Positions 1,965 through 54,157 of a stretch of DNA of 64,000 nucleotides are shown piece after piece. Location: the IMG/VR virus record IMGVR_UViG_3300043464_001630, positions 124,001 through 188,000 of that record. One strand, written 5' to 3'. A program made the position numbers and the translations under genes. The notes beneath the pieces are model-generated. The model had not been told where the DNA came from, did not search any database, and worked only from the letters and a program-made list of their open reading frames with translations. Each line of letters starts with the position of its first letter. Within the stretch, counting starts at the first letter, position 1.

Positions 1965-1998
1965 CCTAATTATTTAGACTATATAACTAAATAATTGA

Positions 1999-8893: not shown

Positions 8894-11128
8894 AGTACGT
8901 TGGCTACTATTTTTATGCTTTGGGTGGCTATTTTTAATGATGACCAAAGAATATTATTAGTAGCAAACAAAGAAAGTACTGCAAAAGAAATCTTTAGAAG
9001 AATTCGAGTCGCCTACGAAGGATTACCAAACTGGCTAAAAGCACCAGTTACTTATTATGGTCTAGAATCTCTCGAATTACAGAACGGATCTCGTATAAGT
9101 ATAACAACAACAACGGGAACCGCAGGTCGTGGTAGTAGTGCGAATCTGTTGTTTGTGGATGAAATGGACTTTATCGAATGCGTAGAAGGGTCAACTACAA
9201 TAAAATTAAAAAACGTAACAACGGGAAAAATAGAAGAAATGTCTATTAAAGACATGCATGATAATAGTAAACATCTATTAAATTTCGATAATTTTCAAAT
9301 ATTATCAGACGATGGCTGGAAATCATTCAAAGGAATAGTAAAGAACGAGAATATTAGATCTGTTAAATTACTATTTGATGATAATACAGAATTAATATGT
9401 AGCGAAGATCATGAGTTATTATCGGATTCTGGAGAATTCATTTTAGCAAAAAAATCAGAAAACACAAAACTAATTTCTGATAAAGGATTTAAATTTGTAA
9501 AGACTGTTTCGGAAAATGGAAAGATAGATGCGTATGATGTTACCGAAGTAGAAGGTAGTAGATATTACACAAATGGGGTGATATCGCACAATTGTAACAT
9601 GCTGTCTGAGTTTTGGTCTTCTGTGTATCCGATTATTTCTTCTTCTAAAAAATCTAAAATCATTGTGGCATCTACTCCAAAAGATACATCAGGTTTATTG
9701 TACAAGCTTTATGATGGTTCAGTAAAAGGAACAAACAACTGGGCACATATGAAAGTACTGTGGAGTGATGTGCCGGGAAGAGATGAAAAATGGAAGAACG
9801 AAACCATATCAGCTCTTGGAGATGTTGGCACTTTCAGGAGAGAATTTGAGTGTGTGACAGGTGAAACTCTCGTCACCATATTAAACAATAACGAGACTAG
9901 TTCAATTACCATCGAAGAATTGTACAAATTAAATAAAAACGGTATAAAAGTTCTAACTCCTTCTGGATTCAAAAATTTCGATGGTATTCAAAAATTAAAA
10001 AAAGAATGCTTAGAATTAGTTCTTAAAACTACATCATTAAAATGTAGCACAAATCACAAAATTTTGACAAAAGGTGGGGATTTCAAATTTTCAAATGAAT
10101 TAACTGTTGGTGAATTCATAAAAACATCTAACGGATATGATGAAATTGTAAAAATACAAGATTCCGGAGTTTTAGATGTATATGATTTGTTGAATGTAGA
10201 AACAAAACAATATTACACTAATGATATTGTATCACATAATTGCACTTTCGATGAGGTAGGCGAATCCGCAATTGATGAAGGTTTATTCGATGATATGCGA
10301 AAATATACAATGGAGCCTATGTATATTTTTGAAAATGGCTGTTATCTTCTCTGGGAGAAACCAAATCCCGACAGACTTTATGTTGCTGGAGTGGATATTG
10401 CAGAAGGAGTCGGAAAAGATGCTACTGTTATTCAGGTATTAGACATTACAGAACCAACAAGAATAAAACAAGTAGCAATTTATCATAACAATAAAATATC
10501 TCCGTCTGAATTCACACCAAAATTACGAGAAATCTTACAACATTGGGGTGATCCATTAGCAATGATCGAGCGTAATGGTTGTGGTGCGCAAGTTGTTGAT
10601 AACTTAAAAAGAGAATTTAGTTATGATAATATAGTAAACTGGGGAATTAATAAAGTCGCGAACAAAAAATCCATGCAACATGGACTAGTTTCGCATACGA
10701 ACACAAAATATACTGGTGTTATGAACCAGAGATATTGGGTGAATACCATGCGTTGCGTACAGATTAATGATATTAATACGGTATTAGACATGAAAGATTT
10801 TATTAGAACTAAATCTGGACATTGGAGTGCTAAAAACGGAGCGAACGATGACAGAGTGATGGCATTGGTATGGGCTCTTATGATTTTACACGAAGATATT
10901 GCTCCGGTCTATTTCGATATCATAGATAAAGACGAATTCGGAAAACCAAAAGTCATAAAATCTGTGGATTATGGAATAAGATATTTCTCTAATCCAACAT
11001 CTATATACACAAATGAAAAAGACGGAATAGGAGGAGATGCCATGCCAATGGTTTTTGGTGGAGATAATTCAGACAACACAGACTTGGACGATCTGATGAA
11101 TCAAGGATGGAAACCATTAAATTATTAA
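8543..11128 (+). CDS. terL: Terminase large subunit, C-terminal fragment: IntC plus exteins with two cis mini-inteins
   Basis: IntC ends ILSHN/S; gp17 motifs LVANKESTAKEI, Walker B LFVDE, ASTP, nuclease GVDIAEGVGKD, IERN, NDDRVMAL. Confidence 0.93.
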   Translation: METKKFIESRKVEDYEIWTDEGWADIQEVHKTIKFDVWTVETENFEIQCADEHIVIGENREEIYVKDLKIGDKIITENGPESVIRVEKLDVEPEHMYDLSIDSENHTFFSNGILSHNSTLATIFMLWVAIFNDDQRILLVANKESTAKEIFRRIRVAYEGLPNWLKAPVTYYGLESLELQNGSRISITTTTGTAGRGSSANLLFVDEMDFIECVEGSTTIKLKNVTTGKIEEMSIKDMHDNSKHLLNFDNFQILSDDGWKSFKGIVKNENIRSVKLLFDDNTELICSEDHELLSDSGEFILAKKSENTKLISDKGFKFVKTVSENGKIDAYDVTEVEGSRYYTNGVISHNCNMLSEFWSSVYPIISSSKKSKIIVASTPKDTSGLLYKLYDGSVKGTNNWAHMKVLWSDVPGRDEKWKNETISALGDVGTFRREFECVTGETLVTILNNNETSSITIEELYKLNKNGIKVLTPSGFKNFDGIQKLKKECLELVLKTTSLKCSTNHKILTKGGDFKFSNELTVGEFIKTSNGYDEIVKIQDSGVLDVYDLLNVETKQYYTNDIVSHNCTFDEVGESAIDEGLFDDMRKYTMEPMYIFENGCYLLWEKPNPDRLYVAGVDIAEGVGKDATVIQVLDITEPTRIKQVAIYHNNKISPSEFTPKLREILQHWGDPLAMIERNGCGAQVVDNLKREFSYDNIVNWGINKVANKKSMQHGLVSHTNTKYTGVMNQRYWVNTMRCVQINDINTVLDMKDFIRTKSGHWSAKNGANDDRVMALVWALMILHEDIAPVYFDIIDKDEFGKPKVIKSVDYGIRYFSNPTSIYTNEKDGIGGDAMPMVFGGDNSDNTDLDDLMNQGWKPLNY
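9179..9592 (+). mobile_element. Cis mini-intein (138 aa) just after Walker B
   Basis: DEMDFIE/CVEGST...CSEDH...AYDVTEV...TNGVISHN/C; no endonuclease domain. Confidence 0.92.
9851..10240 (+). mobile_element. Cis mini-intein (130 aa) at the FRREFE/C motif
   Basis: CVTGET...CSTNH...VYDLLNV...TNDIVSHN/C. Confidence 0.92.
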
Positions 11129-11712: not shown

Positions 11713-11744
11713 AAAAATTAGTTTAAAAAATACTAAATATCTTT

Positions 11745-45197: not shown

Positions 45198-45207
45198 ATA
45201 AAAACAA

Positions 45208-46800
45208 ATGATTGATCGTAGAATAGGAAAAATAAAAGTTCGCAGAGGAACCGACACCCAAAGGAAATTAGTTACCTTTGAAGAAGGCGAACTTGTATAT
45301 TCTATTGACAAGCAGCGTCTTTATATCGGAAATGGAACAGAAAAAGGCGGTATTTTAGTCTCAAACAGAAATTACGTAAAAAATTCAGTAGGAGATCCAC
45401 CAGTAGTTCCGCCCGAAGCACTACACGGTGATATCGTTTATGATAAATCCAATTCGAGAACATATATCACTAAATGCGATTCATTGTCATGTGAGTTATT
45501 ATTAATTGCTGATGCTAATTGTTGTGTTCAACTTCAAAACGAAATAAGTGATTTATACGACAGACTAAGTACATTGTCCGCATGTGCATCAGCATCAATT
45601 CCAAAACCACCAAAACCAACAAAATTGACATGGTATATCCAACCATCGGATATTTCGGTTAATTTAGGCGAAACCGCTACATTTACTGCAAGTGCAATAG
45701 GAGGATTTGGTATTATATCATATAAATGGAACAGAAAAGACGGAACCACTATTTCTGTTATTGACAATCAACCAACTTTAACATTTACTACACAATTAAG
45801 TGATACTGCCACTTATTATTGTGTTGCGAATACACCAACAGAAACCATAACTAGCAGAGATGCTGTGCTAAACATAGGAGCTAATTCTATTTTAGCAGAA
45901 GATGGTACTTATATATTATCAGAATTGAGCGAATTCATTGATTGGGAAGAAAATGGACTAATAGCTCCAACAATAAAAATACAACCAAAATCTCTATCAA
46001 CAACTACATTAGTTCCAGTTACATTTGAAGTTACTGCGGCTGGTAGTGAACCTTTATCTTATCAATGGAAAATTGGGGGAGTAGATCAAATAGGAGAAAC
46101 CAATAGAACATATACAGTAACAAATCCAACAAAAGATATAACAGGAATAACTTGTGTTGTTAGTAATTTAGTAGGAAGTGTTACGAGTAATTCGGTAAAT
46201 CTCGCAGTAGGAATCAAACCAAGTGTAGTTACACAACCACTTTCACAATCGAAATCTTTCGGATCATTAGTCACATTTAGTATAATAGCTGCTGGTAGTG
46301 CGCCATTACTTTATCAATGGAGTAAAGACGGAACGGGAATTACAGGAGCTACATCAAATACTTATACTATAAATTCAGTACAAAATATTGATTTAGGAAA
46401 TTATACTTGTGTTGTGAGTAATGGATTCGGAAATGTTACGAGTAATATTGCTACTCTTGAACTTATATCTTTTACTGGATGTAATATAAATATGACCGAA
46501 TATCTGTATAGTAATGGGTGGGATGGAAATGAATCTTCTCTTAATTCATTTACTATTAATCTTACCGGAAACATTGGATGTTGTGGTGGAACAATTCCTA
46601 CATTTAATTGGGGAACATTAAATATTAATAATTTTATCACAAACATTATATATAATGACGCAAAAGGAAGATTTACATTGGGTTCTGGTGAAGTAGTACC
46701 AGCTAAACTCACTTTAAAAGCAGGAACATACTATTTACAAGGAAATATAAAGGGAGGAGTCGATGTCCAAGGAGGAACGGCAAATTTTGGAGGATGTTAA
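45208..46800 (+). CDS. Mtd_N-like plus 3 Ig domain protein, paralog 3
   Basis: KIKVRRGT..FEEGE; NCCVQL; three Ig units (YKW/YQW...C). Confidence 0.72.
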   Translation: MIDRRIGKIKVRRGTDTQRKLVTFEEGELVYSIDKQRLYIGNGTEKGGILVSNRNYVKNSVGDPPVVPPEALHGDIVYDKSNSRTYITKCDSLSCELLLIADANCCVQLQNEISDLYDRLSTLSACASASIPKPPKPTKLTWYIQPSDISVNLGETATFTASAIGGFGIISYKWNRKDGTTISVIDNQPTLTFTTQLSDTATYYCVANTPTETITSRDAVLNIGANSILAEDGTYILSELSEFIDWEENGLIAPTIKIQPKSLSTTTLVPVTFEVTAAGSEPLSYQWKIGGVDQIGETNRTYTVTNPTKDITGITCVVSNLVGSVTSNSVNLAVGIKPSVVTQPLSQSKSFGSLVTFSIIAAGSAPLLYQWSKDGTGITGATSNTYTINSVQNIDLGNYTCVVSNGFGNVTSNIATLELISFTGCNINMTEYLYSNGWDGNESSLNSFTINLTGNIGCCGGTIPTFNWGTLNINNFITNIIYNDAKGRFTLGSGEVVPAKLTLKAGTYYLQGNIKGGVDVQGGTANFGGC

Positions 46801-46842: not shown

Positions 46843-47556
46843 ATGCCTGTCATCCTTGATCACGATACTCACACATACACCAACACAGAAAATGGTGACA
46901 TTTACACTTCGGTAACCACCTTAATTAATTCTTATAAAAAGAAATTTGACAGCGACAAGTGGAGTAAACACGTAGCTAAGAGAGAGGGAAAATCTCAACA
47001 AGAAATTCTCGACAAATGGAGCGAAATTACCACAGTAGCACAAAACCGTGGTACTAATGTCCATTTGATCATGGAGAATTACATCAAATTTAATAAAATC
47101 GAAAAAGGATACGAAGAGCTGGTGAATTCATTTATTAAAAAAACCAACGGAATTTTAAAGCCTGATTCTAACGTACTCAGTGAATCTCTATTATATTCCC
47201 ACGAAGACAAATTAGCAGGAACTGCCGATCTTATTGTAGAAAATGGTGATATTTTTCATGTCATGGATTTTAAAACAAACAAGCGTTTTAACTTCGACAA
47301 CAAATATAACGAATATTTCTACGAACCAATTGATTATCTACCCCAGTGTGAATTTACGACATATACTATTCAAATGTCTATTTATGCCCACATGCACGAA
47401 CAATTAACTGGAAAGAAATGTGCAGGACTCAGAATCTTCTACCTCAGAGAATTCAGTGATAAAACTTTCTGGCAAGAGTATGCTTGTGTATACATGAAGC
47501 CAACGGTTCTAGATCTTCTAAAAGACAAAAAAATCAAAGACTCTCTTGAAAAATAA
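46843..47556 (+). CDS. PD-(D/E)XK (RecB/Cas4-like) exonuclease
   Basis: SVTT, RGTNVH, AGTADL, MDFKT, QMSIY. Confidence 0.85.
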   Translation: MPVILDHDTHTYTNTENGDIYTSVTTLINSYKKKFDSDKWSKHVAKREGKSQQEILDKWSEITTVAQNRGTNVHLIMENYIKFNKIEKGYEELVNSFIKKTNGILKPDSNVLSESLLYSHEDKLAGTADLIVENGDIFHVMDFKTNKRFNFDNKYNEYFYEPIDYLPQCEFTTYTIQMSIYAHMHEQLTGKKCAGLRIFYLREFSDKTFWQEYACVYMKPTVLDLLKDKKIKDSLEK

Positions 47557-47610
47557 TCCATCCATGTTAAGATACTAACGAACATGACAACCTCTATTAT
47601 TCAAATCTAA

Positions 47611-48099
47611 ATGCAGCACGAAATTATTAATAAATTCGGGAAAGAAGCAACACAAAACTTCTGGATTTTTGTCGAAAACCTAAAATTCGATAGCAAGAAA
47701 CAAGATGCCTCCTCAGTGAGGGCTTCGATTTTAAAGAAGATATCACCTTCTCTTGCTGACAAGTACAAGCAAATCGGAGACGAACTAGCATTTTCCTTGT
47801 ACCGACAAGTCTTTTACGATAAGAAGAACACTTACTTATACGCCTCTTTTGAAGCTGTTTCGAAAGGAAACGAATTTTATCAAAATTGCTGGAATAATGC
47901 CGCACTTATCGAACCCGTAGTAGAATCATTAGATCAATTTAATAATTTCAGCACTGTTCTTCCTACAGAAGACGATTATTTTAACACAATCACTCCAACT
48001 CCAGAAGATGTTTGGGAAGATTACGAAGAATATGATTTCCGTAATGAATCTTTAGGAAACAAAAAAGGCAAGAAAAAGAACAAAGAAGTAACCGAATAA
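47611..48099 (+). CDS. Hypothetical protein
   Basis: 162 aa; upstream TTGAAA-N16-TAAGAT. Confidence 0.6.
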   Translation: MQHEIINKFGKEATQNFWIFVENLKFDSKKQDASSVRASILKKISPSLADKYKQIGDELAFSLYRQVFYDKKNTYLYASFEAVSKGNEFYQNCWNNAALIEPVVESLDQFNNFSTVLPTEDDYFNTITPTPEDVWEDYEEYDFRNESLGNKKGKKKNKEVTE

Positions 48100-48100
48100 A

Positions 48101-48376
48101 ATGAACGAAGAAGAAGTAAAAAAGCGTGGCAAGTACGTGACCAAAAAGTCACTAGAACTTAATAAGCTCTTAGAAGCTGCGGAAGAATATAATTTTGTAG
48201 GAAAGAAAACTTATCCAGTAAATTTAAAGAAAGATAGAGCTGAAGTAGAATTCTTAACAAATGGTACTTGTCTTTTTCCTAATCGTTATTTAGACAACGA
48301 CAGAACTTGTGTGAAATGTGACATTAGCGAATTTTGCGTTTGTTCTTTTAAAAACTTCGGAAAGAAGAAATCATGA
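48101..48376 (+). CDS. Small Cys-cluster protein
   Basis: C...CxxC-x5-CxC. Confidence 0.6.
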   Translation: MNEEEVKKRGKYVTKKSLELNKLLEAAEEYNFVGKKTYPVNLKKDRAEVEFLTNGTCLFPNRYLDNDRTCVKCDISEFCVCSFKNFGKKKS

Positions 48377-48634
48377 GTGATTATGTACGTTTGTAAAATA
48401 TGTAATAAAAATTTTGACAATCATCATCAGTTGAACGGACATAAACAAACACACAAGAAATCCAAAAAACAGATATTATATGAATTAAGCCCTAAACCAT
48501 GTAAAGAATGTAATGAATATATTTCGTGGAAATCTTTTAGGACAAAAACATCTATAGAATTTTGTTGTGTTTCGTGTAGAGCAAAGTTTTTTTATAAAAA
48601 AGCACAAATTGTTGGAGAAAATTCCACACTCTAG
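48377..48634 (+). CDS. Small zinc-finger protein (C2H2 plus C4-type), no nuclease domain
   Basis: CKICNKNF..HKQTH and CKEC...FCCVSC; start may be ATG 48383. Confidence 0.7.
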   Translation: MIMYVCKICNKNFDNHHQLNGHKQTHKKSKKQILYELSPKPCKECNEYISWKSFRTKTSIEFCCVSCRAKFFYKKAQIVGENSTL

Positions 48635-48649
48635 ACTAAATACTTATAG

Positions 48650-49888
48650 ATGCCATTAATCTATAAAAGTTATAAAGTAGAATTAGACCCGACCAATGTT
48701 CAAATCACTAACATGAAAAAGAACATTGGTGCGGCTAGGTTTGCTTATAACTGGGGCTTGCGTAAGAAGATAGAGGCATACGAACAAAAAAACAAAACCC
48801 CTTATTATAATGATCTTCATAAAGAATTAAATTCTATGAAGAAAAGTGAAATTACTTGGGCGTATGAATGTTCTAAGTGTTCTTTTCAAGAAGCATTGGT
48901 AGATTTAGATAGAGCTTTTGATAATTTTTTTTCTAATTGTAAAAAAGGACTCAAAGGCAAGAAAGGGTTCCCCAAGTTCAAATCTAAAAGAAATGATAAA
49001 CAAACGTTCAGATTGTTCGGTTCGATTAGCATTAAAGAAAATGCAATCAAATTACCAAGAATCGGAAAAGTTAAATTAAAAGAAACCGATTATATTCCTA
49101 AAGATATTAGAATTAAGCAAGCCACAGTATCTAAAAAGTCTGGTAGATGGTTTGTGTCGGTTCTGACCGAAATGGAATATGACTCATTATTACAAAACAA
49201 TAAAATAGTCGGTGTTGATTTAGGTATTAAAACGCTTGCTACTTGTTCAGATGGAACAACGTTTAATAATCCTAAAGCTCTCAAAAACAATTTAAACAAT
49301 TTAAAATATCAACAAAGAAAACTTAGTAAAAAAGTTAAAAATAGTAAAAATTATGAAAAACAAAAATTAAAATTACAAAAGATACATTATAGAATCTCAA
49401 ATATTAGAAAAGACAGCTTACATAAAGCGACTTCGAAAATTATTAGCGATAACCAAGTAATAGTTTTAGAAGACTTAAAAGTTTCTAATATGATGAAGAA
49501 TCACAAATTAGCACAAGCCACTAGTGATGTTGGATATTATGAATTTCGCAGACAGATTGAATACAAAGCTAAATGGAACAACAGACAAGTTATATTCGTT
49601 GATCAATTCTTTCCATCTAGTAAATTATGTTCGTCTTGTGGTAATAAGAAAGAAGATTTAAAGTTGACAGATAGAACTTATAAATGCGATTGTGGTTTAG
49701 AAATGGATAGAGATCTTAATGCATCTAAAAACTTAGAACAATTTTATACTGGGAGTTTCTCAGGAATTAACGCTTGTGGAGATGAGAGGTTCATCAAGGA
49801 AACGAAAGTTTCTAAGAGGTGCTCGTCGGTGAAGCAAGAATCTAACAAAAAGACTAGAGAATATACCATTAAAAAGGTTAGACTTTAG
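48650..49888 (+). CDS. tnpB: RNA-guided endonuclease TnpB
   Basis: HTH YKVELDPT..ARFAYNW; RuvC GVDLG / LEDL / DRDLNAS all intact; Zn ribbon CSSC..CDC. Confidence 0.95.
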   Translation: MPLIYKSYKVELDPTNVQITNMKKNIGAARFAYNWGLRKKIEAYEQKNKTPYYNDLHKELNSMKKSEITWAYECSKCSFQEALVDLDRAFDNFFSNCKKGLKGKKGFPKFKSKRNDKQTFRLFGSISIKENAIKLPRIGKVKLKETDYIPKDIRIKQATVSKKSGRWFVSVLTEMEYDSLLQNNKIVGVDLGIKTLATCSDGTTFNNPKALKNNLNNLKYQQRKLSKKVKNSKNYEKQKLKLQKIHYRISNIRKDSLHKATSKIISDNQVIVLEDLKVSNMMKNHKLAQATSDVGYYEFRRQIEYKAKWNNRQVIFVDQFFPSSKLCSSCGNKKEDLKLTDRTYKCDCGLEMDRDLNASKNLEQFYTGSFSGINACGDERFIKETKVSKRCSSVKQESNKKTREYTIKKVRL

Positions 49889-49912
49889 AATTTTGTAAGT
49901 TTAGAAGAACGG
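49749..49912 (+). ncRNA. Putative omegaRNA scaffold overlapping the tnpB 3' end
   Basis: Hairpins CTGGGA-GTT-TCTCAG (49749-49763) and GAAAC-GAAA-GTTTC (49799-49812); GCTTGTGGAGATGAG...CTCGTCGGTGAAGCAAG pairing; usual position for TnpB RNAs. Confidence 0.65.
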
Positions 49913-50127
49913 AATGGAACCCCGCGATTCAAGATATCAAATCACATGAAATTGATCCTTCATGGGTGGCGGGTTTGATGTACTTGATTTTTGATCGATA
50001 TCTATCTAGTGTTTCTGATTCAAAGCAACTAGAATTCTCTAAAGAAGTTTTTCGTTGGCTTTCAGTCATGAAGAAAGATGGTGGTAATTACGTCGAGACG
50101 AAACTACCACCATTCGATGATTTCTAA
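49912..50127 (+). pseudogene. 3' part of a small gene lacking its start (EWNPAIQDIKSHEIDPSWVAGLMYLIFDRY...PPFDDF*)
   Basis: 71 sense codons, protein-like, beginning at the element right end; nearest upstream in-frame stop at 49879 with no start codon between. Confidence 0.6.
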
Positions 50128-53100
50128 GAACTTCTAGTACACTTCAATGATATTGTTAAACTACCAGCATTATCATTTGAAGTAACTACGAATTGTAGAT
50201 AAGAATCAGCAGGAATTGCAGTAACCCAGCCAGTCATGGTAGTTGAAGATGCCTTGGTTGTATTTACCAAAGCTGGTTGGTTTGATAATCCTGATATTAC
50301 CGTATAAGTAGGATGGCTTGCAAAATTAGAAGTTAATACTTGAACAATTGAATTTGTTGGTTGGTTTGCTAGTAAAGTCCATGATAATATTTTAGTATTA
50401 TATGGTATTTGAATATAACCGAAAGCATTTTCTTGTACTAAACTCGAACCTCCGTCAAATATAAAGTTTATTTGAGCAGGAATAGGAGTAATGTTAAAAA
50501 TATTAGATCCGTCACCATAGAAAGTTCCGCTAATATTTGGTGAACTTACAGAAGTATTGAATGTTGCTGTAGTTCCAGTTAATCCACCCGTTAATACACC
50601 ACCAGATAATCCAAGTTTTGTAATATCTATTGATGTTAATCCGGTCACGCGAGTACCGTCACCATAAAAAATTCCACTAATGCTTGGAGCACTGAGTGAA
50701 GTTGTGAAAATTGCAGTGGTTCCAGTTAACCCACCTGTTAATACTCCTCCAGCTAATGGTAGCTTACTACCGTCTATTCCAGATACACCAGTCAATCTGC
50801 TTCCATTTCCATAAAAAGCACCACTGAGATTAGGAGCACTAAGTGAAGTGGTAAACAATCCGACAGTTCCAGTTAATCCACCCGTTAATACACCACCAGA
50901 TAAAGCAAGTTTGCTAATATCTATTGATGTTAATCCAGTCACGCGAGTACCGTCACCATAAAAAATTCCACTAATACTAGGAGCACTGAGTGAAGTTGTG
51001 AAAATTGCAGTGGTTCCGGTCAGACCTCCTGTTAATACTCCACCAGCTAATGGTAGTTTGCTACCATCAATTCCAGACACACTAGTCAATCCACTTCCGT
51101 TTCCATAAAAAACACCACTGAGATTAGGAGCACTGAGTGAAGTTGTAAACAATCCGACAGTTCCGGTTAATGTACCAGTTAATGCTCCACCTGATAATGG
51201 AAGTTTTGTTGGGTCTGCTGCTAATGCAATTCCTGATGTTGTTATTGATGATTTTACCCAAGTATTTGGAGCAGTACAAACATAAAAGAAAGTGGAATCG
51301 TACGCTACTTGTCCTGCTAATCCATAAGATGAACTAGTTGCGGGAGCAGATACAAACGCAACGTTCGTAGTTCTGGCACTATTAGCACCAGAAGTAGTAA
51401 GATACATGAAATTACCATCCCATTCTACAGAATTCTGAACTGGTGTGGTTAATAACGTACCTGCTTGGAATCTTAAAGGTGCTGTAGTTGTGCTTCCAAC
51501 TGCTAAAGTTTGTGTGCTTGTAAATGTATTTGCGAATAATACTGCGTTTGTATTGCCTCTTGCATAAGCTTGAGTTATTGTCAAAGCCGTAGTTCCCACT
51601 ACAATATCAGAAGTTCCTCCACCAGTCGAAGTATTACATGCGTAAATAAATCCATGCGAAGAAGTTCCTTTTGAAACACTGAACATTGTACCGTTACGTA
51701 CAGTTCCTTTATAAAAAGAAGGACGTTCTAATACTGCTTGTATTCCGACTCCTCCGACATTTATTACTTTCCAAGGTCCATTTTGTGCTTGATTGGTTTG
51801 CGAAACAAATAAAATAATATCTCCTACAGATGGAGTAACACCTTCTACCACAGCTAATGCACCCGGATTGGTATATGTAAATACATCAGATACTACACTT
51901 CCTGCTTGATTGGTAGGGTTTCTTAATGTTACGAAATAATGAGGAACATTCGTTCCGTTAGAAACATCTCCATAAAATGTTCCGCTAATACTTTGAGCAC
52001 TAATATTATTAAATAATGCACTAGTACCAGTTACTCCACCAGTTAATGTTCCACCACTTAATGGTAATTTATTAAAATCTGTTGCTAATATATTTGTTAA
52101 TCCAGTTCCATCACCAAAGAAAGAACCGCTAAGATTTGGTGCGCTTAATGAAGTTGTGAATAATCCTACAGTTCCTGTTAATGATCCTGTTAAGTTTCCA
52201 CCTACTAATGGAAGTTTTGAGACGTCTATTCCAGAAACGCCAGTTAGTCCGCTTCCATTACCAAAGAAAGATCCACTAATACTAGCAGAACTTAATGAAG
52301 TTGTGAATAATCCTACAGTTCCTGTTAAGGAACCAGTTAATATTCCTCCACTTAATGGGAGTTTACTGGAATCCGTTCCTACTATATTCGTTAAAAGGCT
52401 ACCGTCTCCACGGAATTTATCTGCCCAAATATCATGCTTTGCACTGATTTCACCGTTAACAGTTAATTCTTTATTTGGTTCGGATTCTCTAACACCAACT
52501 CTACCATCATTGCCAATGTGGAAAACTTCACCATAATCTTGATCATAAAACGAAGCAATATCATATGCGCCACTTGTTTGGAAAACGTATAAGGCAGGTC
52601 CAGCACCATAATTAATAACACTTAATGCACTTGTAGTGGTGAATACAGTGTTCACAAACGTAGCACTACTTAATGCGGTTAATGCCCCATTAATAATTAA
52701 ATTTCCGTCTATTCTACCACCAGTTAATGCAAGTTTTGAACTATCAATTCCAATTAGATTAGTCAAACCACTTCCATCACCATAAAATGTTCCACTTAAA
52801 TTTGGAGCACTTAATGATGTAGTAAATAATCCTTCAGTTCCTGTTAATGATCCAGTTAATACACCTCCTGCTAATGAAAGTTTACTTCCGTCTATTCCAG
52901 AAACACCCGTTAACCTGCTACCATCTCCATAAAATGATCCACTTAAACTAGGAGCACTTAGAGATATTGTAAATAACCCACTAGTACCAGTTAATCCATC
53001 TGTTAATGTTCCTCCTGATAAAGGTAATTTTCCATTATCAATTCCAATTAGATTAGTTAAACCACTACCATCTCCGTAAAATGATCCACTTAAACTAGGA

Positions 53101-54101
53101 GCACTTAATGAAATAGTAAACAATCCTTCGGTTCCTGTTAGTGCTCCTGTAAGTTCACCACCAGATAATTGCAATGCATCAGAATTAATACCAACAATAC
53201 CACTCAATCCACTTCCATCTCCATAAAAAGTTCCGCTTATATTAGGAGCACTCAATGAAACTGTAAACAAACCTTCGGTTCCTGTTAATGCTCCAGTTAA
53301 TTCTCCACCAGATAATGGCAACTTATCATTACTCGTAATAGCAATACCACTTAAATTACTTCCGTCACCATAAAATGTTCCACTTAAACTAGGAGCACTT
53401 AATGAAATAGTAAATAATCCTTCAGTTCCAGTTAATGCTCCGGTAAGTTCACCACCAGATAATGACAACTTATCATTATCAATACCAAAAATACCACTTA
53501 GTCCACTTCCATCTCCATAAAAAGTTCCGCTTATATTAGGAGCACTAAGAGATGTAGTGAATAATCCTTCTGTTCCTGTTAATCCTCCTGTTAGTACACC
53601 ACCAGCTAGTGGTAACTTATCAATATCGATACCAGAAATTCCAGACAATTTACTTCCGTCTCCGTAAAATGTTCCGCTTAAACTAGGAGCACTTAATGAA
53701 ACTGTAAATAATCCTTCGGTTCCTGTTAATGCTCCAGTTAGTTCACCGCCAGATAATGGCAATTTTGTGGTATCAGTACCGAATACTCCGGTTAAACCAC
53801 TGCCATCACCATAAAAAGTTCCACTTAAATTCGGAGCACTTAATGATATGGTAAATAATCCTTCGGTTCCTGTCAATGCTCCAGTTAATTCTCCACCAGA
53901 TAATGGTAATTTTGTAATATCCGTTCCAAATACTTGAGTTAATTGGCTACCAATTCCGATAAATTCATAAGCTGTTACATTTTGCGTAAACAATCCTTCG
54001 GTAGCTGACAAAAGATTATGAGAATAAACATTATCCCAATACGAATCTTTACCAGATGTAGTTCCTGAAATATTTTCGGAAGGTGCTAAAAAGCGAGACA
54101 T
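50124..54101 (-). CDS. Long tail fibre-like protein with 49-aa repeats
   Basis: 16 KLPLSGG..TG..GLFTxSLSAP..SG.FYGDGS repeats; start moved from TTG 54116 to ATG 54101 because of TAAATA-N5. Confidence 0.8.
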   Translation of the reverse strand: MSRFLAPSENISGTTSGKDSYWDNVYSHNLLSATEGLFTQNVTAYEFIGIGSQLTQVFGTDITKLPLSGGELTGALTGTEGLFTISLSAPNLSGTFYGDGSGLTGVFGTDTTKLPLSGGELTGALTGTEGLFTVSLSAPSLSGTFYGDGSKLSGISGIDIDKLPLAGGVLTGGLTGTEGLFTTSLSAPNISGTFYGDGSGLSGIFGIDNDKLSLSGGELTGALTGTEGLFTISLSAPSLSGTFYGDGSNLSGIAITSNDKLPLSGGELTGALTGTEGLFTVSLSAPNISGTFYGDGSGLSGIVGINSDALQLSGGELTGALTGTEGLFTISLSAPSLSGSFYGDGSGLTNLIGIDNGKLPLSGGTLTDGLTGTSGLFTISLSAPSLSGSFYGDGSRLTGVSGIDGSKLSLAGGVLTGSLTGTEGLFTTSLSAPNLSGTFYGDGSGLTNLIGIDSSKLALTGGRIDGNLIINGALTALSSATFVNTVFTTTSALSVINYGAGPALYVFQTSGAYDIASFYDQDYGEVFHIGNDGRVGVRESEPNKELTVNGEISAKHDIWADKFRGDGSLLTNIVGTDSSKLPLSGGILTGSLTGTVGLFTTSLSSASISGSFFGNGSGLTGVSGIDVSKLPLVGGNLTGSLTGTVGLFTTSLSAPNLSGSFFGDGTGLTNILATDFNKLPLSGGTLTGGVTGTSALFNNISAQSISGTFYGDVSNGTNVPHYFVTLRNPTNQAGSVVSDVFTYTNPGALAVVEGVTPSVGDIILFVSQTNQAQNGPWKVINVGGVGIQAVLERPSFYKGTVRNGTMFSVSKGTSSHGFIYACNTSTGGGTSDIVVGTTALTITQAYARGNTNAVLFANTFTSTQTLAVGSTTTAPLRFQAGTLLTTPVQNSVEWDGNFMYLTTSGANSARTTNVAFVSAPATSSSYGLAGQVAYDSTFFYVCTAPNTWVKSSITTSGIALAADPTKLPLSGGALTGTLTGTVGLFTTSLSAPNLSGVFYGNGSGLTSVSGIDGSKLPLAGGVLTGGLTGTTAIFTTSLSAPSISGIFYGDGTRVTGLTSIDISKLALSGGVLTGGLTGTVGLFTTSLSAPNLSGAFYGNGSRLTGVSGIDGSKLPLAGGVLTGGLTGTTAIFTTSLSAPSISGIFYGDGTRVTGLTSIDITKLGLSGGVLTGGLTGTTATFNTSVSSPNISGTFYGDGSNIFNITPIPAQINFIFDGGSSLVQENAFGYIQIPYNTKILSWTLLANQPTNSIVQVLTSNFASHPTYTVISGLSNQPALVNTTKASSTTMTGWVTAIPADSYLQFVVTSNDNAGSLTISLKCTRSS
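50500..53915 (-). repeat. 147-bp (49-aa) coding repeats in three blocks (8+3+5)
   Basis: Counted from the translation; 294-bp near-identical duplication (e.g. 50644 vs 50938); boundaries approximate. Confidence 0.85.
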
Positions 54102-54157
54102 AAAATTATTTATCAAATCTTAAATGATTAACTCATTTGAATTTGTGATTTTCGGAT

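What the first reader, a model, noticed from the sequence alone, without database searches (positions are those of the whole stretch)
48373..50127. Transposase-free TnpB under a phage late promoter: candidate RNA-guided homing element
Seen: TnpB with intact D-E-D residues, no tnpA, TAAATA 7 nt before its ATG, and a structured 3' region ending ...GAACGG (49912). Known: TnpB omegaRNA overlaps the gene's 3' end and takes its guide from DNA flanking the right end, so it cuts element-free alleles. Here the guide would begin AATGGAACCCCGCGATTC, which is phage coding sequence. Inference: expressed late, it could cut co-infecting relatives with the empty site and spread by recombination like a homing endonuclease, or act in phage-phage competition.
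Basis: partly seen in the sequence, partly recalled or inferred. Interest (0 to 1): 0.75.

Follow-up and report, generated by a model that had tools for sequence, protein, structure and literature searches.

The report
Phage TnpB guide-RNA homing cassette
A lake jumbo phage carries a transposase-less cassette (small zinc-finger gene, TnpB nuclease, guide RNA) inside a small phage gene; near-identical phages in the same lakes lack it and still hold the sequence its guide would match, so it looks like a natural RNA-guided homing element.

Summary
Window 48388-49912 (1525 bp) is an insertion absent from collinear relatives. That scaffold ends exactly at ...AACGG (49912) in more than 20 related elements. 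The family is IS607-type: relatives carry a serine-recombinase TnpA and a left end. This copy has neither. A deletion at an ATGTA microhomology removed the left end and 48 nt of the interrupted 93-aa phage gene.

Empty and filled alleles occur in the same metagenomes. One empty allele is identical to a filled one over 2.4 kb, apart from an 800-bp tract of mostly synonymous SNPs beside the site. The filled allele's guide matches that empty allele 21/21.

The cassette is much younger than its flanks (dS 0.15-0.29 against 0.9-2.1) and is under purifying selection (dN/dS about 0.14). TAAATA is a genome-wide signal at structural genes, and the phage encodes a gp55-like late sigma factor.

Unproven: cleavage, expression and TAM. 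Empty alleles show GGAG, whereas family left-end flanks are NGGG. A separate IS607-like element with a TnpA lies elsewhere in the genome.

The parts
48373..48387 (+). Remnant of codons 1-5 (ATGAGTGATTATGTA) of the interrupted 93-aa phage gene. Its ATG overlaps the TGA stop of the upstream 91-aa gene. The last 5 nt (ATGTA) are the microhomology at the left junction and now serve as the start of the ZnF gene.
   Evidence: Alignment with empty alleles L002 and L054.
48388..49912 (+). Inserted cassette of 1525 bp. It replaces 48-49 bp (codons 6-21) of the phage gene. The G at 49912 could equally be phage-derived.
   Evidence: Collinear relative L002 lacks it. Empty allele L054 and filled alleles L049-L051 share the same junctions.
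48383..48634 (+). 83-aa zinc-finger gene: a C2H2 finger (C4, C7, H20, H24) plus a Cys4 FCS-like site (C40, C43, C61, C65). It lies directly upstream of tnpB in every context examined and sits where tnpA sits in canonical relatives.
   Evidence: AlphaFold2 model pLDDT 87.6.
48637..48642 (+). TAAATA (context CTAAATA), 7 nt before the tnpB ATG. This is the genome's start-proximal signal at structural genes and a candidate T4-type late promoter.
48650..49888 (+). tnpB, 412 aa, with RuvC D190/E274/D355 intact and zinc ribbon C327/C330/C346/C348.
   Evidence: dN/dS 0.14 against the L049 copy.
49749..49912 (+). omegaRNA scaffold; its 5' limit is not determined. Stems: 49749-53/49759-63, 49773-76/49835-38, 49781-86/49822-27, and a terminal hairpin 49884-92/49897-905.
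   Evidence: RNAalifold on 14 elements: 24 pairs, 11 with compensatory changes. Coordinates.
49891..49912 (+). Right-end terminal 22-mer TTTTGTAAGTTTAGAAGAACGG. It ends in GG, as IS607-family elements do.
   Evidence: Exact motif in 19 viral contigs. Homology ends here in all of them. It is unique in the genome.
49913..49933 (+). Predicted guide segment (AATGGAACCCCGCGATTCAAG), which is the flanking phage sequence immediately 3' of the right end.
   Evidence: Position follows from the family alignment. Comparison with empty-allele targets.
49912..50127 (+). 3' part (codons 22-93) of the interrupted 93-aa phage gene. It is still an open frame but has no start codon before GVG 49966.

Best explanation
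Window 48388-49912 is an IS607-family derivative that can no longer transpose. It has lost the serine-recombinase tnpA, which is replaced by a small two-zinc-site protein, and it has lost its left end.

It keeps three things: an intact TnpB nuclease, the omegaRNA scaffold overlapping the 3' end of tnpB, and a right end that abuts codon 22 of a small phage gene.

Proposed mechanism (inferred):
1. Late in infection, tnpB is transcribed from its own TAAATA signal.
2. The 3' part of the transcript becomes an omegaRNA whose roughly 16-20-nt guide is the adjacent phage sequence.
3. In a cell co-infected by a relative carrying the uninterrupted gene, the TnpB-omegaRNA complex cuts that allele next to a G-rich TAM.
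4. The recombination-proficient T4-like replication machinery repairs the break from the filled genome. This copies in the cassette and some flanking sequence.

Shown here: the anatomy, family membership, insertion polymorphism, guide-target identity, purifying selection, a recombination tract beside the site, and a cassette younger than its flanks.

Inferred: expression, cleavage, the TAM, and that TnpB cleavage rather than ordinary recombination drives the transfer.
For: Insertion and boundaries: L002 is collinear but lacks 48387-49911. Right-end homology stops at 49912 in 15 aligned elements.

omegaRNA: covariation in 11 of 24 pairs.

IS607 origin: relatives carry a MerR-HTH plus Resolvase TnpA and a left-end motif GGG|TTGACAACAGTT. 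ZnF-type relatives L005, L052, L053 and L076 keep a left end about 90-100 nt upstream of ZnF. The window genome has no left end and only one right end.

Nuclease intact.

The ZnF-tnpB pair is conserved in at least six different genomic contexts.

Empty and filled alleles occur in the same metagenome: Ga0247723 contigs L054 and L050/L055, and again in JGI 3300059473.

The guide of filled L049/L050 equals the target of empty L054 at 21/21, and of L002 at 20/21 with the first 16 of 16 matching.

L054 against L049: 30 SNPs, all within 791 nt of the junction, causing only 5 amino-acid changes, followed by 2424 identical nt.

Window against L049: dS is 0.15 for ZnF and 0.29 for TnpB, against 0.93-1.5 for the left genes and 2.1 for the right fragment. 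dN/dS is 0.13-0.14. The left junction is the same in both. Filled alleles are not monophyletic on flank identity.

Late-type signal and gp55-like sigma.

Recombination genes: an SbcC/gp46-like gene and a PD-(D/E)XK exonuclease.
Against: No RNA data exist for this phage, and no cleavage test was possible.

TAM: nine family left-end flanks all read NGGG, but the empty alleles at this site read GGAG, GGAC, GGAA or GGTG. They may not be cleavable. They may be resistant alleles, or the TAM may be of the AGGAG class reported for other IS607 TnpBs (PMC13565253).

The window's own guide has 2 or more mismatches in its first 16 nt to every empty allele found.

The window and L049 flanks diverge from the second base after the right end. 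The co-conversion expected for direct homing between these two lineages is therefore absent. General recombination or unsampled intermediates must be invoked.

The SNP tract beside the site lies largely in the C-terminal end of a tail-fibre gene, a region that recombines often anyway.

Logan contigs of four lake runs show only the filled allele. Contigs drop minor variants, so this is weak evidence.
Confidence: 0.6

Rival explanations
1. Inert passenger. The cassette is a stranded IS607 remnant with no current activity. Its presence/absence polymorphism and its mosaic flanks come only from the ordinary, frequent homologous recombination of T4-like phages.
For: No left end and no tnpA. The GGAG at empty sites does not match the family NGGG flank. 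The window guide matches no sampled empty allele perfectly. The SNP tract overlaps a tail-fibre tip.
Against: tnpB and ZnF are intact in every lineage, with dN/dS 0.13-0.14. The catalytic triad is intact. The omegaRNA stems are kept by compensatory changes. Cassette dS is 3-10 times lower than flank dS, with sharp boundaries. Both genes retain phage-type start signals in several contexts.
Confidence: 0.15
2. Competition weapon rather than drive. The phage keeps TnpB-omegaRNA because cutting the uninterrupted gene of co-infecting relatives excludes them or their nearby markers. The benefit goes to the carrier phage whether or not the cassette is copied across.
For: The same anatomical evidence as the main explanation. 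The guide targets a conserved coding segment (EWNPAIED) shared across lineages that are 75-85% identical. The cassette sits beside host-range (tail-fibre) genes, whose linked inheritance would be favoured. Precedents for phage homing endonucleases used in competition are cited in PMC13565253 and in bioRxiv 10.1101/2023.09.30.560319.
Against: It cannot be separated from homing with the present data. The recombination tract beside the site in L049/L054 indicates that DNA was actually transferred.
Confidence: 0.12
3. Regulated nuclease, or addiction or defence-type module. The zinc-finger protein acts as a repressor or inhibitor of TnpB. This would be analogous to the Arc or RHH/MazE partners described for other TnpBs. 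The pair would then act as a toxin-antitoxin-like or regulatory unit, not primarily as a homing device.
For: A small nucleic-acid-binding-type protein lies invariably upstream of tnpB. Small DNA-binding partners of TnpB have been proposed as antitoxins or repressors (PMC10691335; bioRxiv 10.64898/2026.09.24.754181).
Against: No support for a ZnF-TnpB interaction: the complex prediction gave no answer. The fold search gave only generic C2H2 similarity. A regulatory ZnF is compatible with homing rather than an alternative to it.
Confidence: 0.08
4. Non-autonomous IS607 element, mobilised in trans by the serine-recombinase TnpA encoded elsewhere in the same genome.
For: The genome encodes an IS607-type TnpA at 10174-10776.
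Against: That TnpA is only 31% identical to the TnpA of this cassette's own family. The cassette has no left end. Only one copy and one right end exist in the genome. The same deletion-type left junction is present in diverged lineages, which transposition would not reproduce.
Confidence: 0.05

Closest known systems
IS607-family insertion sequences (serine-recombinase TnpA + TnpB + omegaRNA; e.g. the C. botulinum IS607/IStron elements studied in PMC10690162)
   Same: The closest relatives of this tnpB (58-61% aa) sit directly downstream of a MerR-HTH plus Resolvase TnpA. The right end terminates in GG, and left-end flanks read NGGG. The omegaRNA overlaps the 3' end of tnpB, and the guide is the right flank.
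   Different: There is no tnpA, no left end and only a single copy. A zinc-finger gene occupies the tnpA position. Both genes in native ZnF-type copies carry a phage start-proximal TAAATA signal. The element resides in a lytic-type T4-like jumbo phage.
TnpB-omegaRNA 'restorative homing' (ISDra2 and G. stearothermophilus IS605, Meers et al. 2023) and TnpB-driven IS spread among plasmids (Mears et al. 2025, cited in PMC13565253)
   Same: It is an RNA-guided nuclease whose guide is the sequence that reappears at an element-free allele, with repair from a filled copy. ISDra2 TnpB is the closest natural solved relative (E 2e-68).
   Different: The target here would be the allele of another co-infecting phage genome, not the sister chromosome after TnpA excision. 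The 2026 review lists this only as theoretical 'non-restorative homing'.
Free-standing homing endonuclease genes of T-even phages (Seg and Mob proteins: intronless homing, localized marker exclusion)
   Same: It is inserted between or within conserved genes of T4-like phages and is polymorphic among close relatives. It is likely expressed late, targets a conserved coding sequence, and has a flanking conversion tract.
   Different: Recognition would be by a guide RNA copied from the flank rather than by a protein. Self and non-self are told apart by the presence of the cassette, as in intron homing. It is not homologous to GIY-YIG or HNH enzymes; only the ZnF shows a weak match to the middle of an HNH endonuclease PHROG.
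TnpB with small DNA-binding partners (Arc in IS605; RHH/MazE-TnpB; PMC10691335)
   Same: A small putative nucleic-acid-binding protein is encoded immediately upstream of tnpB.
   Different: The partner is a C2H2 plus Cys4 zinc protein. This pairing was not found in the papers searched. TnpB here has a canonical, not rearranged, catalytic site.

Membership tests
TnpB / OMEGA RNA-guided nuclease | RuvC-like D-E-D catalytic triad and zinc ribbon in an OrfB_IS605-type protein | tested here: met
   Pfam domains. D190/E274/D355 align to ISDra2 D191/E278/D361.
TnpB / OMEGA RNA-guided nuclease | Structured omegaRNA overlapping the 3' end of tnpB and ending at the element's right end | tested here: met
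   24 consensus pairs, 11 with compensatory changes, across 14 elements. Conservation ends at 49912. No Rfam family matched.
TnpB / OMEGA RNA-guided nuclease | Guide equals the DNA flanking the right end and matches the element-free allele | tested here: met
   The L049/L050 flank matches the L054 empty allele 21/21 and L002 20/21. For the window's own lineage, the nearest empty allele (L058) differs at 2 of 16 positions.
TnpB / OMEGA RNA-guided nuclease | A TAM 5' of the target that equals the left-end flank | tested here: inconclusive
   The family left-end flanks read NGGG in all 9 cases. Empty alleles here read GGAG, GGAC, GGAA or GGTG. This cassette's own left flank is deleted.
TnpB / OMEGA RNA-guided nuclease | RNA-guided DNA cleavage | not testable with these tools
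   Needs a biochemical or cellular assay.
IS607-family insertion sequence | Serine-recombinase TnpA (MerR-like HTH plus Resolvase) within the element | tested here: not met
   Absent from the cassette. It is present in relatives L006/L033, L040 and L044. A different IS607-like TnpA lies at genome 10174-10776.
IS607-family insertion sequence | Left end with TnpA-binding sequence, and a right end terminating in GG | tested here: not met
   The right end is present and ends in GG. There is no left-end motif anywhere in the genome. The left junction is a deletion at an ATGTA microhomology.
IStron (group I intron + IS) | Group I intron ribozyme at the 5' end that restores the interrupted gene | tested here: not met
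   No Rfam hit at E<=1 in 47000-51500. Also, 48 nt of the gene are deleted, so splicing could not restore it.
RAGATH-18-guided IS607 TnpB | RAGATH-18 RNA motif downstream of tnpB | tested here: not met
   No Rfam match.
Homing genetic element (functional class) | Presence/absence polymorphism at one homologous site among close relatives, with the target intact in empty alleles | tested here: met
   Filled: window, L049, L050, L051 and a JGI 3300059473 contig. Empty: L002, L054, L056-L061.
Homing genetic element (functional class) | Co-conversion of flanking markers, and an element phylogeny discordant with the host backbone | tested here: inconclusive
   There is an 800-bp SNP tract beside the site in otherwise identical L049/L054. 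Cassette dS is much lower than flank dS. However, no shared flank tract exists between the window and L049, and the SNP tract lies in a recombination-prone fibre gene.
T4-type late promoter | TATAAATA-like -10 element recognised by a gp55-type sigma, upstream of late (structural) genes | tested here: inconclusive
   TAAATA is enriched 9.6x and lies at fixed spacing. It is present at portal, sheath and fibre genes and absent at polymerase, helicase and SbcC genes. A gp55-like domain is present (phrog_234, E 5.6e-21). Transcription start sites were not observed. The fixed 5-nt spacing could instead mark a translation signal, or leaderless transcripts.

The most novel reading that the evidence does not exclude
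ZnF-TnpB-omegaRNA cassettes are a distinct class of free-standing, RNA-guided homing endonuclease genes adapted to T4-like phages. The transposase has been replaced by a zinc-finger partner, and both genes carry the phage's late-gene signal. The cassette acts as a natural gene drive between co-infecting phages. Its guide is re-written automatically from each new flank. The GGA/GGT (non-GGG) glycine codon seen in all surviving empty alleles would then be a TAM-escape resistance allele.
Probability: 0.4. Interest if true: 0.85.

Novelty: new variant of a known kind. Interest (0 to 1): 0.78.

Why it matters
TnpB is known to preserve IS605/IS607 transposons by cutting the vacated site. It has also been shown experimentally to help an IS spread among plasmids. 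Homing between viral genomes has so far been listed only as a theoretical possibility (review PMC13565253).

This locus gives a natural test case. It has matched filled and empty alleles from the same lakes and an exact guide-target pair. Because the cassette cannot transpose, any spread must be by recombination.

It also reveals a recurrent zinc-finger partner of TnpB, which I did not find described in the papers searched. It suggests that some IS607 derivatives have adopted phage late-gene signals.

If confirmed, it would show that RNA-guided nucleases have evolved into phage homing or competition genes. It would also offer compact TnpB-omegaRNA pairs with natural targets for study.

Tried and rejected
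- Rfam scan of 47000-51500 at E<=1: nothing. This rules out a group I intron (IStron) and RAGATH-18.
- Single-sequence RNA fold: not better than shuffles (z = -1.0). Only covariation supports the structure.
- blastn and tblastn against GenBank phages: only distant tnpB matches and no ZnF homologue. No cultured relative or host was identified.
- RNA runs: none holds this DNA, so expression could not be checked.
- Read laying on four lake DNA runs: the filled allele is present at about 100% identity and no empty-allele joint appears. These are assembler contigs, which drop minor variants.
- ZnF-TnpB complex prediction: no answer. This is not evidence either way.
- ZnF fold search in the PDB: no match at E<=0.001, only generic C2H2 fingers.
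It lies inside the ZnF gene, which is part of the element.
- A 2-nt register shift at the right junction (CGGAG shared by the right end and the empty site): considered and rejected. All family right ends stop at AACGG, and the shift would put guide and target out of register.
- Using dN/dS of the 3' gene fragment (0.075) as evidence that it is still functional: rejected. Most of that divergence predates the cassette's arrival.
Full report
**What is in the sequence.** The window is bases 124001-188000 of a 236,391-bp IMG/VR virus record judged complete. It has 33.7% G+C and comes from lake water. The window holds the structural module of a distant T4-like myovirus: large terminase, tail sheath (34% identical to T4-like sheaths), baseplate wedge and tail fibres. 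Between two fibre genes lie, in order:
- a PD-(D/E)XK exonuclease gene;
- two small ORFs of 162 and 91 aa;
- an 83-aa zinc-finger ORF (48383..48634);
- a 412-aa tnpB (48650..49888);
- a 216-nt open frame running to 50127.

TnpB has the three Pfam domains of the family. It aligns end to end with ISDra2 TnpB (E 2e-68). The catalytic residues D190, E274 and D355 and the zinc-ribbon cysteines are in place.

A 242.6-kb relative (L002) is collinear. Window 46839-48386 matches L002 7997-9546, and window 49912-51210 matches L002 9596-10900. The 1525 bp in between are replaced by 49 bp in L002. In L002 those 49 bp belong to an intact 93-aa gene. In the window that gene is split. Codons 1-5 remain at 48373-48387, codons 6-21 are missing, and codons 22-93 follow the insertion in frame.

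The 22-mer that ends the insertion (TTTTGTAAGTTTAGAAGAACGG, 49891-49912) occurs in 19 viral contigs. In an alignment of 15 elements, similarity is high up to ...AACGG and then vanishes.

**The omegaRNA.** Folding the window's 3' region alone is no better than folding shuffled sequence (z = -1.0). A consensus fold of 14 elements, however, gives 24 base pairs, of which 11 keep pairing through changes on both sides. In window coordinates the stems are 49749-53/49759-63, 49773-76/49835-38 and 49781-86/49822-27, plus a conserved terminal hairpin at 49884-92/49897-905. No Rfam family matches, so this is neither an IStron nor a RAGATH-18 RNA.

**Family: IS607-type, but stripped.** The closest tnpB relatives (58-61% aa) lie directly downstream of a MerR-HTH plus Resolvase TnpA (L006/L033, L040, L044). 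Their left end carries the motif GGG|TTGACAACAGTT...AAATATCTAAAGAAAGT. Other relatives carry extra cargo or have lost tnpA.

In the window and in L005, L052, L053, L076, L077 and L078, the gene directly upstream of tnpB is instead the small zinc-finger protein. It has invariant C4/C7/H20/H24 and C40/C43/C61/C65. Its predicted fold is confident (pLDDT 87.6) but has no significant PDB match. A complex prediction with TnpB gave no answer.

L005, L052, L053 and L076 still have a left end about 90-100 nt upstream of ZnF. The window genome has no left-end motif and only one right end. It has no Y1 tnpA and only this copy of the tnpB.

The left junction reads ...GATTATGTA|CGTTTG. ATGTA is both codons 4-5 of the phage gene (in another frame) and the native start of the ZnF gene; all homologues begin MY[V/I]C. 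The simplest history has two steps. First came an IS607-type insertion at codon 21/22. Then a deletion between the two ATGTA copies removed 48 nt of phage gene, the TAM-bearing flank, the left end, and ZnF's own upstream signal. The first step is inferred; the junction itself is observed.

**A caveat to 'transposase-free'.** Outside the window, at genome 10174-10776, there is an IS607-type serine recombinase. It is 200 aa and 31% identical to the TnpA of this cassette's family. A 528-aa Cas12f/TnpB-like gene follows it. This is a separate element. With no left end and a different right end, the cassette is unlikely to be its substrate.

**The 'late promoter'.**
- TAAATA precedes 80 of 210 long ORFs, a 9.6-fold enrichment. 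The spacing is almost fixed at 5 nt (49 cases), 6 nt (12) or 7 nt (8) from the ATG. tnpB has the 7-nt spacing.
- Shine-Dalgarno-like motifs are not enriched in this genome.
- The motif occurs in blocks. It is present before the portal, sheath and fibre genes, and absent before the DNA polymerase, helicase and SbcC-like genes.
- A 500-aa protein carries a gp55-like late-sigma domain (phrog_234, E 5.6e-21).
- From my own knowledge of T4, the late promoter TATAAATA spans -13 to -6. A 5-nt spacer would then put the transcription start on the A of the ATG, giving leaderless late mRNAs. That is an inference.
- Native ZnF-type cassettes in other contigs carry TAAATA-N5 before ZnF and TAAATA-N6/7 before tnpB. 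The cassette itself therefore appears adapted to this kind of phage.

No RNA data exist for this phage.

**Population evidence for homing-like spread.**

(a) The filled allele, with the same two junctions, occurs in a second lineage about 85% identical to the window (L049, L050, L051 and a JGI 3300059473 contig). It also occurs at about 100% identity in four lake studies.

(b) Empty alleles with the intact gene occur in at least six sequence variants (L002, L054, L056/57, L058, L059/60, L061). L054 comes from the same metagenome as filled L050 (Ga0247723). JGI 3300059473 also holds both states.

(c) The right flank of filled L049/L050 (AGTGGAATCCAGCTATCGAAG) is identical to the L054 target. 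It differs from the L002 target only at position 17. In both empty alleles the target is preceded by (T/C)GGAG.

(d) Over 3216 nt to the right of the site, L054 and L049 differ at 30 positions. All 30 lie within the first 791 nt, and they cause only 5 amino-acid changes. The remaining 2424 nt are identical. This is a neutral imported tract abutting the insertion site, as co-conversion would leave.

(e) Between the window and L049, the cassette is 92-96% identical (dS 0.15 for ZnF, 0.29 for tnpB). The flanking genes have dS 0.93-1.5 on the left and 2.1 on the right, and the change is sharp at both boundaries. dN/dS of both cassette genes is about 0.14.

(f) On flank identity, L049 groups with the empty alleles L054 (99%) and L002 (84%), not with the filled window (75%).

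So a cassette that cannot transpose, and that carries an idiosyncratic deletion junction, is shared by backbones that diverged long before it did. That requires transfer by homologous recombination.

**What remains open.** The evidence does not show that TnpB cleavage initiates the transfers.
- All nine left-end flanks recoverable in the family read NGGG, in line with the GG rule and the TGGG/GAGGG TAMs reported for IS607 (PMC10690162, PMC13565253). At this site, where a GG would be expected, the empty alleles read GGAG, GGAC, GGAA or GGTG.
- Two readings fit. The TAM may be of the AGGAG class also reported for IS607 TnpBs. Alternatively, the original target carried a GGG glycine codon and today's empty alleles are TAM-defective survivors. 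GGG makes up only 5% of glycine codons here, so its absence is not itself evidence.
- The window's own guide has 2 or more mismatches in 16 to every empty allele found.
- The window and L049 flanks differ from the second base after the right end. They are therefore not donor and recipient of one another by a simple break-repair event.
- The SNP tract lies mostly in the C-terminal end of a tail-fibre gene, where recombination is common for other reasons.

**Comparison with what is known.** Mechanistically, the closest systems are two. One is TnpB 'restorative homing' in IS605/IS607 (Meers et al. 2023; PMC10690162). The other is TnpB-dependent spread of an IS among plasmids (Mears et al. 2025, cited in PMC13565253). 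In lifestyle it resembles the free-standing Seg and Mob homing endonuclease genes of T-even phages. Homing of a TnpB element between co-infecting phages appears in the 2026 review only as a theoretical category. I found no description of a C2H2/Cys4 zinc-finger partner of TnpB; other small DNA-binding partners (Arc, RHH/MazE) are described.

By the membership tests, this is a TnpB-omegaRNA module of IS607 descent. It is not an IS607 element, because it has no TnpA and no left end.

**Verdict.** I rate it a new variant of a known kind.
- Anatomy and origin: about 0.9 confidence.
- RNA-guided homing or competition between phages as the current function: about 0.6.

Noticed in passing
outside the window: genome G000:C1:10174-12355 (loci L072-L074): A second, unrelated IS607-like element in the same phage. 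It has a 200-aa MerR-like plus Resolvase TnpA, followed by a 528-aa protein with a Cas12f1-like TNB domain whose closest solved relatives are Cas12f/OrfB proteins. At that identity it is absent from the relative G001 (the L002 genome), which has a different distant TnpB-like ORF at 239469-240152.
   Followed up: partly
whole genome; examples in window 1993-1998, 11739-11744, 45202-45207: TAAATA lies at a nearly fixed 5-7 nt before the ATG of about 80 genes, and no Shine-Dalgarno enrichment is seen anywhere in the genome. If it is a gp55-type promoter, the late mRNAs would be leaderless.
   Followed up: partly
outside the window: genome 103528-105030 (L062): The gp55-like late sigma domain (phrog_234) occupies only residues 400-480 of a 500-aa protein. 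This late sigma factor is therefore fused to a large N-terminal region of unknown function.
   Followed up: no
L039 6856-7563; L047 (same arrangement): Relatives of the element carry a 235-241-aa DNA methyltransferase (phrog_67, E 1e-64) as cargo between tnpA and tnpB.
   Followed up: partly
L040, L044, L039, between the left end and tnpA: A conserved 61-68-aa ORF (…FETDDG..YPIPFELDDVP..EEFQRIYDEWF…) lies between the left end and tnpA in canonical members of this IS607 group. Its function is unknown.
   Followed up: no
L035 4042-4299; L041 2961-2982: There are right-end remnants without tnpB. L035 has two copies of the terminal 22-mer 236 nt apart. L041 has a copy of the last ~40 nt after an unrelated 323-aa ORF.
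   Followed up: no
window 48950: The window has C where the contigs of all four lake runs have A (TnpB L101I). This is either a private variant or an assembly error in the record.
   Followed up: no
window 50124-54116 (- strand) and 45208-46800: The two fibre genes flanking the locus are highly variable between relatives. The 1330-aa fibre is built of ~49-aa 'LPLSGG.LTG.LTGT.GLFT.SLSAP..SG.FYGDGS' repeats whose number differs between relatives (1016 aa in L002). The Mtd_N/Ig fibre is 530 aa here but 1019 aa, with an added repeat domain, in L002.
   Followed up: no
L005 5218-5409 (- strand): In L005 the right end of the ZnF-tnpB element supplies the last codons and the stop codon of a 63-aa minus-strand host ORF. 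That insertion also altered a phage gene end.
   Followed up: no
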